Assembly (NCBI RefSeq): GCF_006345805.1
Contig: NC_043011.1
Location: forward strand, 7,998,001 to 8,062,000
Reading direction: 5' to 3'
Length of the DNA: 64,000 nucleotides
From: Octopus sinensis
Taxonomy: Eukaryota
In this document: positions 13,292 through 28,395 of the stretch, one piece after another
Numbering within the stretch: position 1 is the first letter of the stretch
Layout of the letters: each line of letters begins with the position of its first letter
Made by a program: the position numbers and the translations under genes
Notes under the pieces: generated by a model
Databases searched by the model: none
What the model saw: the letters and a program-made list of their open reading frames with translations, nothing else
Told to the model about the DNA's origin: nothing

Positions 13292-13480
13292 TTACATACC
13301 AAACAATGTATTGACATCTTTCACCAGAGTTTGTCTGGTGTCTTCCCGCAACTGTTTTAAGTACTCTTCATTGGGTACGTATTTAGCGTAGTTGAAGCGG
13401 CCACGGATCGCGGCGACGACACTTTCTATGACGAAAAGGCGTAGTGAGTCTCTTAAAAAGTCAAAACGGAGCATAAACAC
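13292..13480 (-). CDS. Terminal coding exon D of the same gene
   Basis: Acceptor ttctgtcttttattctctctcaaAG; phase 0, VFMLRFDFLRDSLRLFVIESVVAAIRGRFNYAKYVPNEEYLKQLREDTRQTLVKDVNTLFGM then TAA. It continues the LRFPD..PY motif of exon C in the expected way. Confidence 0.82.
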   Translation of the reverse strand: MFMLRFDFLRDSLRLFVIESVVAAIRGRFNYAKYVPNEEYLKQLREDTRQTLVKDVNTLFGM

Positions 13481-13674
13481 CTTTGAGAGAGAATAAAAGA
13501 CAGAAGGTATTAAAGGATGATAACAATCAAAAATGACTGAAAAAATCTATGGAAGTACAGGGATATCAAAATTTCGAGAATATTAGCAAATATTACGGAG
13601 ATGTACTTGCATAGCAAGTGATTTGATCTGAGATCGTGTGCTGAAACGAAAGCAATTGCAGCGTGGAAGGTGTT

Positions 13675-13889
13675 TGTAAGCCATTTAAGAAACACACAAA
13701 AACCGTTAGATTCACTTCAACATTTAAATTTAATTTGTCAAAATATTTTCGTCGCTTTAAGACCGCGACCTGTTGGATTTTTTTCAGTGAAGAGGTCGCG
13801 GTCTTAAAGCGACGAAAATATTTTGACAAATTAAATTTAAATGTTGAAGTGAATCGAACGGTTTTTGCGTGTTTCTTAAATGGCTTACA
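13675..13889. repeat. Inverted repeat (about 97-bp arms, about 21-nt spacer), MITE or pLTR foldback
   Basis: tgtaagccatttaagaaac...gaccgcgacct / aggtcgcggtc...ttcttaaatggcttaca, with few mismatches. Confidence 0.9.
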
Positions 13890-14289
13890 TTAGCAAATAT
13901 AATAGCGATCTAAGAAAGGCTGAAGTGGAAGAAAGAATGTGGAAATAATGAATAGGATGAACCCAATACATAAGTATAGGTGAAAGAAACCTTGGGGATG
14001 CTTTGCTCCACGCAAAAATTACAGGAACTAATCCAGTGCTTCGCAACTTATTTTTCACTTGCGGCACACTTATATTCTTATCGAAATTCGGTGGCACATC
14101 TGAACTTAAAATATAACTAAAGGTATAGGGAAACAGTTATATTAAGGTTACACTGTGGCACATTTAGCATCGTCTCGTTCCTCACCAGTGTGCCGTGGCA
14201 TACCGATTGCGGAGCACTGAGCTATTCAGGGGTTTAGCAAGTTCTTCTTTTGTATCCATTCCAATGATAGGAACCCTTTCGTACCACCA

Positions 14290-14640
14290 CCAGGTAGCTC
14301 AGAGTCACGAGCATTCTGTCTCTTAGTCTGCACCCTTTGATTTGCTTGGGCAGCCAGGACCGAATTAATCTTCACCAGCAAAACGGTTCTAGTTGTAATC
14401 TCTTAGTAATCACGTTCACCTTGAGCTGGTTCCAGCTTCCACATCGACATCGTTGCTGGCTTTCTTCAGTAGTTTGGATTTCAGACCAATCTTCTGGAGG
14501 AAATTGTGCACCGATGTAGCGGAGAAGCCGCGGTAGGCTACTTTAGCAGGGAACGAGGTCCGCGTGGCTATCCTTGACAGGGGCCTCATTGACCAAGCCT
14601 TGGTATTCAGTTTTCTTTAACCACTAAGGAATCTCAAGTA
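14290..14640 (-). mobile_element. HERO-like RLE non-LTR retrotransposon 3' fragment
   Basis: Minus-strand VAYRGFSATSVHNFLQKIGL...EAGTSS resembles the RLE C-terminal VG.RGF motif; the 3'UTR is homologous to 28800-28865. Confidence 0.55.
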
Positions 14641-14762
14641 ATTTTTCCAGGTGAGGCTCAAGGCCCGCAATATTCGGATAAAGAAGTTAATCAATTACTT
14701 GCACATTAGATTGGTACTTTATTTCACTGACTCCAGAGGGGTGTAATCTTTCAGTGTATCGG

Positions 14763-14945
14763 ATGATGATGATGACGATGATGATGATGATGATGATGGT
14801 GGTGGTGGTGGTGGTGGTGGTGGTGATGATGATGATGACGATGATGATGATGATGATGATGATGATAATAATAATAATAATAATAATAATAATAATAATA
14901 ATAATAATAATAATAATAATAATAATAATAGTAATAATAATAATA
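14763..14945. repeat. Compound (GAT)n(GGT)n(TAA)n microsatellite
   Basis: Read directly; it abuts the 5' end of the Dong-like LINE. Confidence 0.95.
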
Positions 14946-26079: not shown

Positions 26080-26990
26080 TCTCCTGTCCGTTTATTATTT
26101 CCTCCAAGACGTGATGTTAATAACCCGAAAATATATTTCTCCTCATGCATTTTGAGTAATGAAAGTGTATCTGATTCAGAATATTTTCTGACAAAATGCA
26201 TTTTCAAAATTGCAGCCGTTCAAAGCAAAATGTCCAGCAAATTCTGTCGAACCACTGTTATTGTGCGTGTCGTCATATCTGTGCCCCATTGAATCATTTG
26301 TCTAATTGTTCTGTTGTGCAACCAGCATAAATCAAGTCGTGGTTTGTGCATTCTACTGCGTACAACAAATAGGAATCTTTACATGTGCCACATTCTGCGT
26401 AAATCACAACATTTCTGTTATGATTCTTGATGGAATTCACTTGACTTATGTTGTTACACAATGAACCGGGCTTATCACTCTTGCGGTTGCTTTTCAAGGA
26501 ATAGCGTGCAGATACTCCAATGATATTTTTCTTTGAGTCAGAAGTAGAGGTCAATAATTCTCATATATTTTCATTCCGTCTAAAGCCCAAAAATGTCCGG
26601 CTGAAGAAACATCTGTTTGAAACGAGAGTATTTTTCCGCCAAATGTTGGTAATTTTCATGCAACACTTTTGAAATGCCAACGAAATTTCGGTGCCAGTTA
26701 ATCACTAAAGGAATTCTGTTAGATATTGTACTGTTTTTTCCTAAAATTATGTGAGTCAAGTTTTGACTTTCTTGCTAATCCTAACTATTTCATCTGCTAT
26801 TTCCTTTAATCGTGATTCACTGTAACTGCGATTGACATAATGGTGTAGAAAAGCATTTGTATGCTTCCAGTAATCCCTATGTCAGTACAAACCCGTTTAT
26901 TCCCGCCAAAATGGGGATTTCGGATTTGACAATGGATGCGTACTGGTCTGAAAAGTCATGGTCGTATATATGCAAGGACAAAAGTAAATC
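26080..26990 (-). mobile_element. Degenerate Penelope-like element (thumb + GIY-YIG)
   Basis: RIPLVINWHRNFVGISKVLHENYQHL (thumb); SLCNNI...TCKDSYLLYAVECTNHDLIYAGCTTEQLDK*FNGHRYD...FAGHF (GIY-YIG). Confidence 0.75.
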
Positions 26991-27030
26991 ACAACAATTA
27001 AGTTGAATGCGAGACGGCCTTCATCTAACA

Positions 27031-27355
27031 CAGGGGTTCTCAACCATTTTTTAAATCTATTAACCCCATTTGTTATTGTTTTATTCTGGTGGACCCCTCC
27101 ATAGCCATTCGATGCTTAAAAACTAGTTTTATAGAAATTTCTTTCAAAATTCTTCTTTTGTTTTTCACTCATTAACTTATGTAAGTTGAACTGTGTGAAA
27201 TGTTAGACAAAAGAACCCAACCGTTTCTTGCAATACACACCAACACATACATTAAAAACAACATTTATCTGCAGGGGCCCTTACAATACTGCCGTGGATG
27301 TTCAATTTACTATTTTGTTACGTGGACCCCATCAACATCTCATGTGGACCCTTGG
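27031..27355 (+). mobile_element. hAT-type MITE fragment
   Basis: Starts CAGGGGTTCTCAACC, a typical hAT terminus, and has internal gtggacccc motifs; the right TIR was not found. Confidence 0.5.
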
Positions 27356-27479
27356 TGTCAAACTTTTCTTCATGCTCCTTGTGACCTGTTCACTGACACA
27401 GAAATGCTGCAAGTGAAATGAAATGGATGTACATATAGTAAAAATATTAATATTTAAGAAATGTAACATTTTTATTTAC

Positions 27480-27671
27480 CAGCTTATGGTCGATTGCACC
27501 GCTAGAAAAATCCAGTATTGTGGTTGTTGTTTTCGACATTACGCTTTCAGAAAAGTTTCTTCTTTCACCAACCATTTCCAAATATGGTATTCTGTCCAAA
27601 GAATCCAAAAGACCTTCCCAACTTGTTTTATTCAGCTTATCCATTTCACTTATAGCACCAGCAACCATTAT
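27480..27671 (-). CDS. Internal exon B of the same gene
   Basis: Acceptor ttcggttgcacAG; 192 nt, phase 0-0, IMVAGAISEMDKLNKTSWEGLLDSLDRIPYLEMVGERRNFSESVMSKTTTTILDFSSGAIDHKL; donor GTaaat at 27479. Confidence 0.85.
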
Positions 27672-28210
27672 CTGTGCAACCGAAATACATAGATAACTAG
27701 ATAAACATAGATATACAGTTATACATATACACAATACGCAAGCATTTGATTGTGTGTGCAAGTGTGTGTGTGGATGTTTGCATTTGTATGTGTGTGAGAG
27801 AGAGAATGTGTGTGTGTGTGTGAGTGTGATGAAAGACAGATCGTTGCTTATCTACGACGATGTTTGTTGAACCTGTTCGATGCCATTGAATTATTCCAGG
27901 ATATTTCGCTGGAACGAATTTCATTCATAACAATCAGAATAATTACTCCACTTCAAAAGTAAAGAAATGAAAGAAAACAGCATTCGACACATTTCAATTT
28001 AGATTTACAATCTTTCCGTAACAAGTTGACTTAGGTCCGTATCAAAGTTAGTTAAATTACTTGAATCCTGCACTCCATTCCTTACTACCGAACATTCGGA
28101 AACTACTCCTGACTGAGGTCTCTGCCGGTTAACTAATAGATATCAATGAAAACCGGAGCGAGGTGCAAACGAATGTAGACATACAATGTTAATATGACAG
28201 TTGAACTTAC

Positions 28211-28395
28211 TTTTAAATTGTCATCGATCGTCTTCAAAGATTCGAATTGGAGTGTCCCGAACGTGGCCGCCAGTTCAAACCTGATGTCAAATTTGTCGCC
28301 AAGTTCCGTTTTTTCTGTAAGTCTTTCAATGACCTGACCCGGGGTGTTCAAGTGAAGAATTTTGTCCACTGCTTCATCATCATTTATAGTGTGTT
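28211..28395 (-). CDS. Internal exon A of unannotated host gene (fungal-type uncharacterised protein family)
   Basis: Minus strand: pyrimidine-rich acceptor ...ctctcaaacactaacAG, then open phase-1 exon (x)HTINDDEAVDKILHLNTPGQVIERLTEKTELGDKFDIRFELAATFGTLQFESLKTIDDNLK, then donor GTaagt at 28210. Ends in phase 0, matching exon B. Confidence 0.85.

What the first reader, a model, noticed from the sequence alone, without database searches (positions are those of the whole stretch)
13292..28395. Hidden four-exon gene encoding a fungal-type uncharacterised protein, possibly a Cyt/volvatoxin-like pore former
Seen: four exons spread over 15 kb of repeats have canonical AG/GT sites and matching phases (1-0, 0-0, 0-0, 0-stop), and join without stops into about 259 aa (…ESLKTIDDNLK|IMVAGAISEMDKLNKTSWEGLLDSL…|IYAAEKWLDGII…DLAILRFPDVMNPYLS|VFMLRFDFLRDSLRLFVIES…FNYAKYVP…). 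Recalled, not searched: the motifs LDD.LK(I/V)MIAG, SWE, W(F/L)..LI, D(I/L)(G/A)(V/I)LRFPD...PY..V.R..., R.LF and F....F.P match a family of hypothetical proteins I know mainly from filamentous fungi. Inference: the C-terminal strand-loop-long strand-'RLFVI'-strand pattern parallels the three-strand meander of Bacillus Cyt toxins and mushroom volvatoxin A2. A fully intronised cephalopod member could be an ancient horizontal acquisition and/or a secreted cytolytic (venom or defence) protein.
Basis: partly seen in the sequence, partly recalled or inferred. Interest (0 to 1): 0.82.

Follow-up and report, generated by a model that had tools for sequence, protein, structure and literature searches.

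The report
Secreted Cyt-toxin-like octopus gene
The four exons are real and belong to an already annotated but unstudied five-exon Octopus sinensis gene for a secreted protein; its uncharacterised family is mostly fungal, and its predicted fold most resembles the membrane-damaging Cyt toxins of Bacillus thuringiensis.

Summary
All four exons lie on the minus strand with AG/GT sites and the stated phases. Adding a fifth, 5' exon (30656-30596, signal peptide) gives a CDS that translates exactly to NCBI 'uncharacterized protein LOC115219946 isoform X3' of Octopus sinensis. The gene is therefore annotated, not hidden.

It heads a tandem array of at least three copies. Both the paralogue and the O. 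bimaculoides orthologue keep the same exon structure (dN/dS 0.47-0.77).

The recalled 'fungal-type family' is real. A whole-library HMM search finds 123 cluster representatives with no Pfam model. Named members are mostly fungi, plus Marchantia, a fern, algae, two filamentous cyanobacteria, chloroviruses and, among animals, only cephalopods. Signal-peptide-like N-termini occur in the cephalopod members but in few others, and not in the named fungal ones.

An AlphaFold2 model built on 111 sequences has core pLDDT of mostly 85-97. Its nine best Foldseek PDB matches are all Cyt1Aa, Cyt2Aa or Cyt2Ba toxins or the Cyt-like Evf (probability 0.63-1.0). TM-scores are only 0.19-0.33, and no sequence method links the family to PF01338.

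Verdict: a divergent, probably Cyt-like secreted protein. Membrane activity is plausible but untested, and horizontal origin is plausible but unresolved.

The parts
30704..30713 (-). TATA-like box (TATTAAAAGG), about 50 nt upstream of the ATG. Putative core promoter.
   Evidence: Read directly from the sequence. The block is conserved in the duplicated promoter at about 5100-5115. A promoter role is an inference.
30596..30656 (-). Coding exon 1: ATG plus signal peptide MNQLLLIFCFTFSVVITQKP and the first base of Glu21. Donor GTATGT, phase 1.
   Evidence: tblastn gives 100% identity to residues 1-20 of the NCBI protein. Sequence read. The five-exon CDS equals P0001. Hydrophobic N-terminus.
28211..28395 (-).
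   Evidence: Acceptor TAACAG, donor GTAAGT.
27480..27671 (-). Coding exon 3 (192 nt): IMVAGAIS...SWE...DHKL. Holds predicted helices and the beta-hairpin 113-134.
   Evidence: Acceptor GCACAG, donor GTAAAT.
22290..22502 (-). Coding exon 4 (213 nt): W153 helix layer and the first long strand, ending in the LRFPD...PY motif.
   Evidence: Acceptor TCTCAG, donor GTGAGT.
13292..13480 (-). Coding exon 5 (189 nt including stop TAA): two long strands (216-232, 235-253) and the C-terminal helices.
   Evidence: Acceptor TCAAAG.
13024..13029 (-). First AATAAA after the stop codon (262 nt downstream). Candidate polyadenylation signal.
   Evidence: Its function is an inference.
4766..5489 (-). Duplicated promoter, exon 1 (ATG at 5054; exon 5054-4994) and start of intron 1 of the next tandem paralogue ('isoform X2'). 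Its other exons lie beyond the window start.
   Evidence: 88.8% identical to 30366-31075. Identical signal-peptide exon. The remaining exons were found in locus L001 with the same lengths and splice sites.

Best explanation
This is a functional five-exon gene of Octopus sinensis (LOC115219946, 'isoform X3'). It is the first of at least three tandem copies.

It encodes a 279-aa precursor. A cleavable signal peptide sends a mature protein of about 258 aa into the secretory pathway, and three conserved N-glycosylation sequons fit that route.

From about residue 59 onward the protein is a divergent member of an unnamed family with no Pfam model. The family is abundant in fungi and scattered through a liverwort, a fern, algae, filamentous cyanobacteria and chloroviruses. 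Among animals it was seen only in cephalopods.

The predicted core is a single alpha/beta domain. Six antiparallel strands include three very long C-terminal ones, with helix groups between them. The order of elements is that of the Cyt delta-endotoxin fold.

By analogy, which is inference and not shown here, the protein would be soluble until it meets a lipid bilayer. The helix layers would then swing away and the long strands 191-253 would embed, oligomerise and make the membrane leaky. That would give the octopus a secreted defence or venom-type cytolysin. The disordered cephalopod-specific residues 22-58 could act as a pro-segment.

The gene most likely entered the cephalopod lineage by old horizontal transfer. 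It then gained introns and a signal peptide and was amplified in tandem.
For: Gene model:
- The CDS translates exactly to P0001, and all four introns are GT..AG.
- The tandem paralogue has the same exon lengths, 61/185/192/213/189.
- O. bimaculoides keeps these lengths for exons 2-5, and its exon 1 differs only by one extra Val codon.
- dN/dS is 0.47-0.48 between species and 0.76-0.77 between paralogues, so the frame is maintained.

Secretion:
- The N-terminus is hydrophobic in the cephalopod members and in few others, and in none of the named fungal members.
- The sequons N96, N121 and N170 are invariant in three octopus sequences.

Family:
- 123 representatives at E<=1e-3 and 58 at E<=1e-10.
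- 162 further proteins at E<=1e-5, named as fungi, Marchantia, Ceratopteris, Choristocarpus, Acetabularia, Microcoleus and an ATCV chlorovirus. An Okeania MAG also carries one.
- The alignment is full-length with conserved blocks.

Fold:
- The AF2 model has pTM 0.71, with residues 60-279 mostly at pLDDT 85-97.
- The nine best Foldseek PDB hits are 1cby, 6t1c, 6t1a, 3ron (two chains), 6t14, 2rci and Evf 2w3y (two chains). E-values run from 7e-5 to 1.2e-3. Probability is 0.95-1.0 for the Cyt entries and 0.63-0.66 for Evf. The next class, Bet v 1/PYL, has probability 0.2 or less.
- The element order b-aa(a)-bb-aaa-bbb-aa matches the published description of Cyt toxins: a six-stranded antiparallel sheet between two helix layers, with b5-b7 implicated in membrane binding (PMC4179158).

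Arrays: tandem copies occur in octopus and, judging by consecutive locus tags, in Leucocoprinus and Mycena. From general knowledge, such arrays are common for defence and toxin genes.
Against: - TM-scores to every Cyt structure are only 0.19-0.33, with rmsd 9-15 A. That is below the usual same-fold threshold of 0.5, so the similarity rests on local 3Di patterns and element order, not on a good global superposition.
- No sequence or profile-to-sequence method links the family to PF01338 or to any solved Cyt or volvatoxin chain.
- Volvatoxin A2 was not among the listed fold hits.
- Evf shares the fold but, from general knowledge, is not a pore former, so the fold alone does not imply lysis.
- No expression, tissue or activity data could be obtained, and no paper mentions the gene or its relatives.
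- A rough neighbour-joining tree does not unite all cephalopod members (bootstrap 0) and identifies no donor.
- Only 30 of the 123 representatives were looked up by name, so other animal members cannot be excluded.
Confidence: 0.5

Rival explanations
1. The gene, the family and the Cyt-like scaffold are as described, but the protein does not lyse membranes. It would be a lipid- or small-ligand-binding secreted protein, like Evf or a Bet v 1/START-type carrier, and would work in signalling, lipid transport or surface coating.
For: - Evf (2w3y) is among the top fold hits, and Bet v 1/PYL lipid- and ligand-binding proteins fill ranks 10-50.
- Most family members lack signal peptides.
- Members are about 50% identical across fungi, a liverwort and cyanobacteria, which could reflect a conserved intracellular role.
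- The Okeania homologue sits next to a class-3 lipase, hinting at lipid metabolism.
Against: - The Bet v 1-type matches have probability 0.2 or less and TM about 0.1.
- The Cyt toxins outrank Evf.
- From general knowledge, tandem amplification, fast evolution (dN/dS up to 0.77 overall and above 1 in exon 3) and a gained signal peptide are more typical of effector and defence proteins.
Confidence: 0.25
2. The resemblance to Cyt toxins is a Foldseek or AlphaFold artefact. The family would then have a fold of its own, and nothing can be inferred about its function from Cyt toxins.
For: - TM-scores are 0.19-0.33 and rmsd 9-15 A.
- There is no PF01338 or PDB sequence signal.
- The model depends on an alignment in which the octopus sequence is only about 22% identical to most rows.
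Against: - The nine best of 845 matches come from one structural family, at probabilities of 0.63-1.0.
- The order of secondary-structure elements matches the published Cyt topology.
- Model confidence in the core is high.
- The independently predicted chlorovirus homologues match the model at TMq 0.54-0.68.
Confidence: 0.2
3. On origin only: the gene was not acquired horizontally. It would be an ancient eukaryotic gene inherited vertically, lost in most animal lineages, and fast-evolving in cephalopods.
For: - Cephalopod members are very divergent, about 20-25% identical to all others.
- They have introns and occupy at least three loci on different chromosomes.
- They fall into two groups that do not cluster together.
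- No donor clade could be identified.
Against: - The distribution is extremely patchy. Among animals only cephalopods carry names. Members in a liverwort, a fern, a brown alga, a green alga, two cyanobacteria and chloroviruses are about 36-57% identical to fungal ones. That pattern is hard to explain without transfers.
- Only one locus was found among 185,579 prokaryotic species genomes.
Confidence: 0.3

Closest known systems
Bacillus thuringiensis Cyt delta-endotoxins (Cyt1Aa, Cyt2Aa, Cyt2Ba; Pfam PF01338)
   Same: - They are the best and almost the only significant PDB fold matches (E from 7e-5 to 1e-3, probability 0.95-1.0).
- Both are single alpha/beta domains of similar size.
- Both have the same order of strands and helix groups, with three long C-terminal strands.
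- In both, the conserved domain is preceded by an N-terminal segment. In the octopus protein it is disordered. A role as a pro-segment is only an inference.
   Different: - There is no detectable sequence relationship and PF01338 is not matched.
- TM-scores are 0.25-0.33.
- The octopus strands are longer (17-19 residues).
- The octopus protein is eukaryotic, encoded by an intron-containing gene, and exported through a classical signal peptide.
- Its activity is unknown.
Volvatoxin A2 of the mushroom Volvariella volvacea
   Same: It shows that a fungal protein can carry the Cyt fold with less than 17% sequence identity to Bt Cyt toxins (PMC4179158). That is a precedent for very divergent Cyt-fold proteins in Agaricomycetes, the group richest in this family.
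   Different: It was not among the 50 Foldseek matches listed, and no sequence match was found in the PDB searches. A direct comparison was not made.
Evf virulence factor of Erwinia (Pectobacterium) carotovora (PDB 2w3y)
   Same: It appears among the top fold hits at ranks 7 and 9, with E of 6.5e-4 and 1.2e-3.
   Different: TM is 0.19-0.21. It is bacterial. From general knowledge it is a lipid-modified persistence factor, not a pore former.
Unnamed family of about 260-aa 'hypothetical proteins' in fungi (for example Mycena, Leucocoprinus, Fusarium, Trichoderma), Marchantia and chloroviruses (ATCV NE-JV-2 275R)
   Same: The homology is full-length and shares the conserved blocks LAxSFGxL, MDxxLK(I/V)MI(A/S)G, SW, WFxxLI, DIGVLRFPDxxxPYFKVYR, RxLF, FxPR and EAExLF. 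Examples of the HMM E-values are 1e-21 for the best non-cephalopod representative and 9.6e-62 for the octopus protein against the 66-sequence family profile.
   Different: - The octopus protein is only about 20-25% identical to them.
- It has a signal peptide and an extra N-terminal segment of about 37 aa.
- It has three sequons.
- It is encoded by five exons within a tandem array.
Horizontally acquired pore-forming toxins in animals, such as aerolysin-type biomphalysins of the snail Biomphalaria (from general knowledge)
   Same: The concept is the same: a microbial-type membrane-damaging protein domesticated by a mollusc, intronised and amplified.
   Different: It is a different fold and family. 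For the octopus gene neither the transfer nor the activity has been demonstrated.

Membership tests
Cyt delta-endotoxin / volvatoxin family (Pfam PF01338) | Sequence match to the PF01338 profile or to solved Cyt or volvatoxin chains | tested here: not met
   - hmmscan of the octopus protein at E<=10 returned no families.
- None of 111 family members hit PF01338 at E<=0.1.
- phmmer and a profile search against PDB sequences found no Cyt or volvatoxin chain.
Cyt delta-endotoxin / volvatoxin family (Pfam PF01338) | A single alpha/beta domain in which a six-stranded antiparallel sheet lies between two helix layers (PMC4179158) | tested here: inconclusive
   - The AF2 model has six strands and two helix groups in Cyt order.
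- Foldseek's top nine hits are all Cyt or Evf, with probability 0.63-1.0.
- However, TM is 0.19-0.33 and rmsd 9-15 A. The model coordinates could not be superposed independently.
Cyt delta-endotoxin / volvatoxin family (Pfam PF01338) | Three long consecutive C-terminal strands (b5-b7), the proposed membrane-binding and inserting element | tested here: met
   The model has strands 191-207, 216-232 and 235-253 at pLDDT of about 87-97. This is a prediction, not an experimental structure.
Cyt delta-endotoxin / volvatoxin family (Pfam PF01338) | Direct lipid binding with cytolytic or haemolytic activity | not testable with these tools
   This needs recombinant protein and liposome or erythrocyte assays.
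Unnamed 'LRFPD...PY' family (fungi, plants, algae, chloroviruses, cephalopods) | A significant full-length profile match that includes the conserved blocks | tested here: met
   - 58 representatives at E<=1e-10, matching query positions of about 58-278.
- The octopus protein scores 9.6e-62 against the family profile.
- Invariant P209 and P214, and near-invariant D78, W153, R207 and P253.
Classically secreted protein | An N-terminal signal peptide, with sequons conserved | tested here: met
   - Hydrophobic core LLLIFCFTFSVVI in residues 4-16.
- N96, N121 and N170 sequons are invariant among three octopus sequences.
- This rests on a heuristic only. No dedicated signal-peptide predictor was available.
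Horizontally transferred gene in an animal genome | The gene is truly integrated and is not contamination | tested here: met
   - It lies on a 67.9-Mb chromosome scaffold with spliceosomal introns full of octopus repeats.
- An orthologue with the same structure lies on a 55.6-Mb O. bimaculoides scaffold.
Horizontally transferred gene in an animal genome | Absent from related animals and nested within a donor clade | tested here: inconclusive
   - All named animal members are cephalopods: Octopus, Argonauta and Acanthosepion.
- Only 30 of 123 representatives were looked up, and many have no name.
- In the neighbour-joining tree the octopod clade has bootstrap 100, but adding Sepia gives 59, all cephalopods together give 0, and no donor is resolved.

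The most novel reading that the evidence does not exclude
Coleoid cephalopods would carry the first animal members of the Cyt-toxin structural superfamily. These would have been acquired by ancient horizontal transfer from a fungus, alga or giant virus, given introns and a signal peptide, and amplified in tandem as secreted cytolysins for venom, mucus or immune defence. The same unnamed family would then be a widespread, overlooked class of Cyt-like membrane-damaging defence proteins in mushrooms, moulds, liverworts and chloroviruses.
Probability: 0.3. Interest if true: 0.8.

Novelty: new variant of a known kind. Interest (0 to 1): 0.6.

Why it matters
If the Cyt-like fold and membrane activity hold, three things follow.
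- The Cyt toxin superfamily would extend from bacteria and one mushroom toxin to a large family with no Pfam model, spanning fungi, plants, algae, giant viruses and cephalopods.
- Octopuses would gain a new candidate venom or defence effector.
- It would add a clear case of toxin-type genes moving between kingdoms, including a possible role for giant viruses.

If the fold match fails, what remains is still a well-defined, widely scattered orphan family with an unusual taxonomic distribution.

Tried and rejected
- **Pfam and PDB sequence searches** of the joined protein and of the family profile found nothing useful.
- **AlphaFold2 on three octopus sequences** gave an unusable all-helical model (pLDDT 38) and was discarded in favour of the 111-sequence run.
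- **Word-indexed homologue search with a 66-sequence alignment** saturated on random candidates and returned 8 proteins. A 6-sequence query worked.
- **IMG/VR scan** found no confirmed viral locus. The chlorovirus homologues came from the protein and BFVD searches instead.
- **Prokaryote genome scan** found a single Okeania locus. Its neighbours, a class-3 lipase, an alpha/beta hydrolase and a TPR protein, give only a weak hint.
- **P0034 as possible cDNA evidence for splicing** was rejected, because it reads through the exon-2 donor into the intron and is therefore genomic.
- **Literature searches** by locus tags, accessions and by Cyt-like/volvatoxin/cephalopod terms found no paper on this gene or family.
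- **A shorter exon 3 ending at LEM|GTTGGT** was rejected. The CTG|GTAAAT donor reproduces the NCBI protein and the paralogue structure.
- **Retroelement ORFs in the introns** are decayed fragments unrelated to the gene.

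
Full report

Yes. Reading the DNA around them gives four exons:
- 28395-28211: acceptor AACAG|, donor |GTAAGT.
- 27671-27480: acceptor GCACAG|, donor CTG|GTAAAT.
- 22502-22290: acceptor TCTCAG|, donor |GTGAGT.
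- 13480-13292: acceptor TCAAAG|, stop TAA.

The joined 258-aa peptide is 100% identical over its whole length to NCBI 'uncharacterized protein LOC115219946 isoform X3 [Octopus sinensis]', 279 aa.

The missing 21 residues are a signal peptide, MNQLLLIFCFTFSVVITQKP plus the first base of Glu21. It is encoded by a fifth, 5' exon at 30656-30596 with donor GTATGT in phase 1. The five-exon CDS translates exactly to the NCBI protein. A TATA-like box lies about 50 nt upstream of the ATG, and AATAAA lies 262 nt after the stop.

The window is O. sinensis assembly GCA_006345805.1, chromosome CM016873.1, at about 7.998-8.062 Mb. The gene is called there, so it is annotated rather than hidden.

**2. Surroundings**

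The promoter, exon 1 and the start of intron 1 are duplicated at 4766-5489, 88.8% identical to 30366-31075. This is the start of the next tandem copy, NCBI 'isoform X2', which is 75% identical in protein. Its other exons lie beyond the window, and I recovered them in locus L001 with the same exon lengths (61/185/192/213/189) and splice sites. A third exon-1 copy follows about 21 kb further on.

O. bimaculoides has an orthologue with the same structure, followed by a more distant family member.

Nei-Gojobori dN/dS values:

| Comparison | dN/dS |
|---|---|
| X3 vs O. bimaculoides | 0.48 |
| X2 vs O. bimaculoides | 0.47 |
| X3 vs X2 | 0.77 over the whole CDS, 0.76 for the mature region |
| X3 vs X2, exon 3 alone (few sites) | above 1 |

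These are intact, fast-evolving genes under moderate constraint. The introns (2200, 539, 4977 and 8809 nt) hold microsatellites and decayed retroelements.

**3. The family**

Pfam and PDB sequence searches were empty. A full HMMER scan of 1.84 billion cluster representatives, using a profile of the three octopus sequences, found 123 proteins at E<=1e-3 and 58 at E<=1e-10. Most are 250-310 aa and match query positions of about 58-278.

Name look-ups and a second homologue search showed these members:
- Cephalopods: three O. sinensis loci, O. vulgaris, O. bimaculoides, Argonauta hians and Acanthosepion pharaonis.
- Many fungi: Mycena, Leucocoprinus, Cubamyces, Trametes, Galerina, Fusarium, Trichoderma, Podospora, Morchella, Mortierella and Podila.
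- Plants and algae: Marchantia polymorpha (three genes), the fern Ceratopteris, the brown alga Choristocarpus and Acetabularia.
- Cyanobacteria: Microcoleus and, from the prokaryote genome scan, one Okeania MAG.
- Viruses: Acanthocystis turfacea chlorovirus NE-JV-2 ORF 275R.

No member has a Pfam domain, and I found no paper on any of them.

Signal-peptide-like N-termini occur in the cephalopod members, Acetabularia, a EukProt transcriptome protein (P0232) and a few unnamed sequences. The named fungal members lack them.

**4. Fold**

With only three sequences AlphaFold2 failed (pLDDT 38). With 111 family members as the alignment and the octopus protein first, it gave pTM 0.71, with residues 60-279 mostly at pLDDT 85-97. 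Residues 1-58 are disordered.

The elements in order are:
- strand 61-65
- helices 71-76, 79-93 and 100-108
- hairpin 113-134
- helices 144-158, 164-167 and 171-180
- three long strands 191-207, 216-232 and 235-253
- helices 255-260 and 263-276

Foldseek against the PDB returned as its nine best matches only Cyt toxins (1cby Cyt2Aa; 6t1c, 6t1a, 6t14 and 3ron Cyt1Aa; 2rci Cyt2Ba) and the Cyt-like Evf (2w3y). E-values ran from 7e-5 to 1.2e-3. Probability was 0.95-1.0 for the Cyt entries and 0.63-0.66 for Evf. The next class, Bet v 1/PYL, had probability 0.2 or less.

The element order agrees with the published description of Cyt toxins: a six-stranded antiparallel sheet between two helix layers, with b5-b7 implicated in membrane binding. 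Volvatoxin A2 shares that fold at less than 17% identity (PMC4179158).

Against this, TM-scores are only 0.19-0.33 and rmsd 9-15 A, and volvatoxin A2 is not in the list. In the viral library the model matches two UniProt entries, M1I283 and M1HBT0, which carry no name in the tables at hand. From their accession range I take them to be chlorovirus proteins. The scores were E=1.5e-17 with TMq 0.68, and E=1.7e-9 with TMq 0.54.

I therefore rate the Cyt-like fold as likely, about 0.6, but not established.

**5. Mechanism**

Shown:
- An intact, conserved, tandemly amplified gene.
- A signal peptide and three conserved sequons.
- Membership of the family.
- A confident alpha/beta model whose only significant structural neighbours are Cyt-type proteins.

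Inferred:
- The secreted protein binds membranes directly.
- The helix layers move aside and the three long strands insert and oligomerise, as proposed for Cyt toxins.
- The disordered segment 22-58 may be a pro-segment.
- The role is defence or venom.

Non-lytic lipid binding, as in Evf, is the main functional rival.

**6. Origin**

The gene is integrated in the octopus genome and is not contamination: it lies on a chromosome-scale scaffold, has introns, and has an orthologue in a second species. Among named animal sequences only cephalopods appear. Elsewhere the distribution is very patchy, with about 36-57% identity between fungal, plant, algal, cyanobacterial and viral members. That pattern argues for repeated transfers.

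A rough neighbour-joining analysis gave these bootstrap values:

| Grouping | Bootstrap |
|---|---|
| Octopod clade containing this gene | 100 |
| That clade plus the cuttlefish sequence | 59 |
| All cephalopod members together | 0 |

No donor was resolved. Horizontal acquisition before the octopod radiation, possibly before the octopus-cuttlefish split, is plausible at about 0.6 but unproven. Only 30 of the 123 representatives could be looked up by name.

**7. Comparison and novelty**

The gene model is already in the databases. The new points are:
- the link to a large, mostly fungal family with no Pfam model;
- the near-restriction of signal peptides to the cephalopod members;
- the tandem array;
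- the structure-based link to Cyt toxins.

Membership of PF01338 by sequence was tested and not met, so I do not file the protein as a Cyt toxin. I file it as a probable distant structural relative, a new variant of a known kind.

Interest is 0.6. That is above ordinary because of the cross-kingdom distribution and the toxin-like fold. It is limited by the low TM-scores and the lack of any expression or activity data.

Noticed in passing
window 4766-5489 and 30366-31075; L001 30977-31036: NCBI files X2 and X3 as isoforms of one locus. They are in fact separate tandem genes, each with its own promoter and an identical signal-peptide exon. A third exon-1 copy lies about 21 kb beyond the second gene.
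   Followed up: yes
L003 10903-10966 (O. bimaculoides): The NCBI model for the O. bimaculoides orthologue (P0002, 323 aa) has a doubtful 65-aa N-terminus. A proper signal-peptide exon (MVNQLLLIFCFTFSVVITKKT, donor GTATGT) sits upstream and restores the five-exon structure.
   Followed up: partly
window exon 28395-28211 compared with exon 22502-22290, against the X2 paralogue: Divergence between the two tandem copies is very uneven: dS is 0.027 in exon 2 but 0.43 in exon 4. This suggests gene conversion at the 5' end or a mosaic history. In exon 3, dN exceeds dS, though the site counts are small.
   Followed up: partly
window 20697-22102: A 1.4-kb (AAT)n microsatellite inside intron 4 lowers GC to 0.146 in that 2-kb bin. 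Three further (AAT)n arrays of about 113 bp recur at roughly 655-bp spacing at 22849, 23504 and 24166.
   Followed up: no
window 18714-19433 and 19664-20373: An inverted repeat in intron 4 has arms of about 720 bp that are 97.8% identical and about 230 bp apart. It may be the ends of a foldback or other transposable element.
   Followed up: no
window 16218-17885 (+) and 6682-7119 (+): Decayed retroelement ORFs lie within or beside the gene. One is a weak RVT_1 match in intron 4. The other is a weak GIY-YIG match that may be a Penelope-like element.
   Followed up: partly
window 49281-50275 and 50225-51223; 53220-53319: A tandem direct duplication of about 1 kb (97.8% identical) carries identical 136-aa ORFs. 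There is also a 100-N assembly gap.
   Followed up: no
L002 1785-2639 and 2921-4156 (Okeania sp. SIO2F4 MAG): This was the only family member found by the scan of 185,579 prokaryotic species genomes. It is followed 281 bp downstream, on the same strand, by a class-3 lipase, and is preceded by an alpha/beta hydrolase.
   Followed up: partly
proteins P0022, M1I283 and M1HBT0 (chloroviruses); P0008 (Acetabularia): Chlorovirus ATCV NE-JV-2 encodes a family member (P0022). Two BFVD entries, M1I283 and M1HBT0, match the model; they are unnamed in the tables at hand, and I assigned them to chloroviruses from memory. The Acetabularia member (P0008) has a signal peptide and an extra N-terminal domain of about 230 aa. 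Giant viruses could be vectors for the family's patchy spread.
   Followed up: partly
protein P0006 (O. vulgaris, 338 aa): In this paralogue the N-terminal module (RFELAATFGxLxFESLK...NLK) occurs twice in tandem, which points to an internal exon duplication.
   Followed up: no
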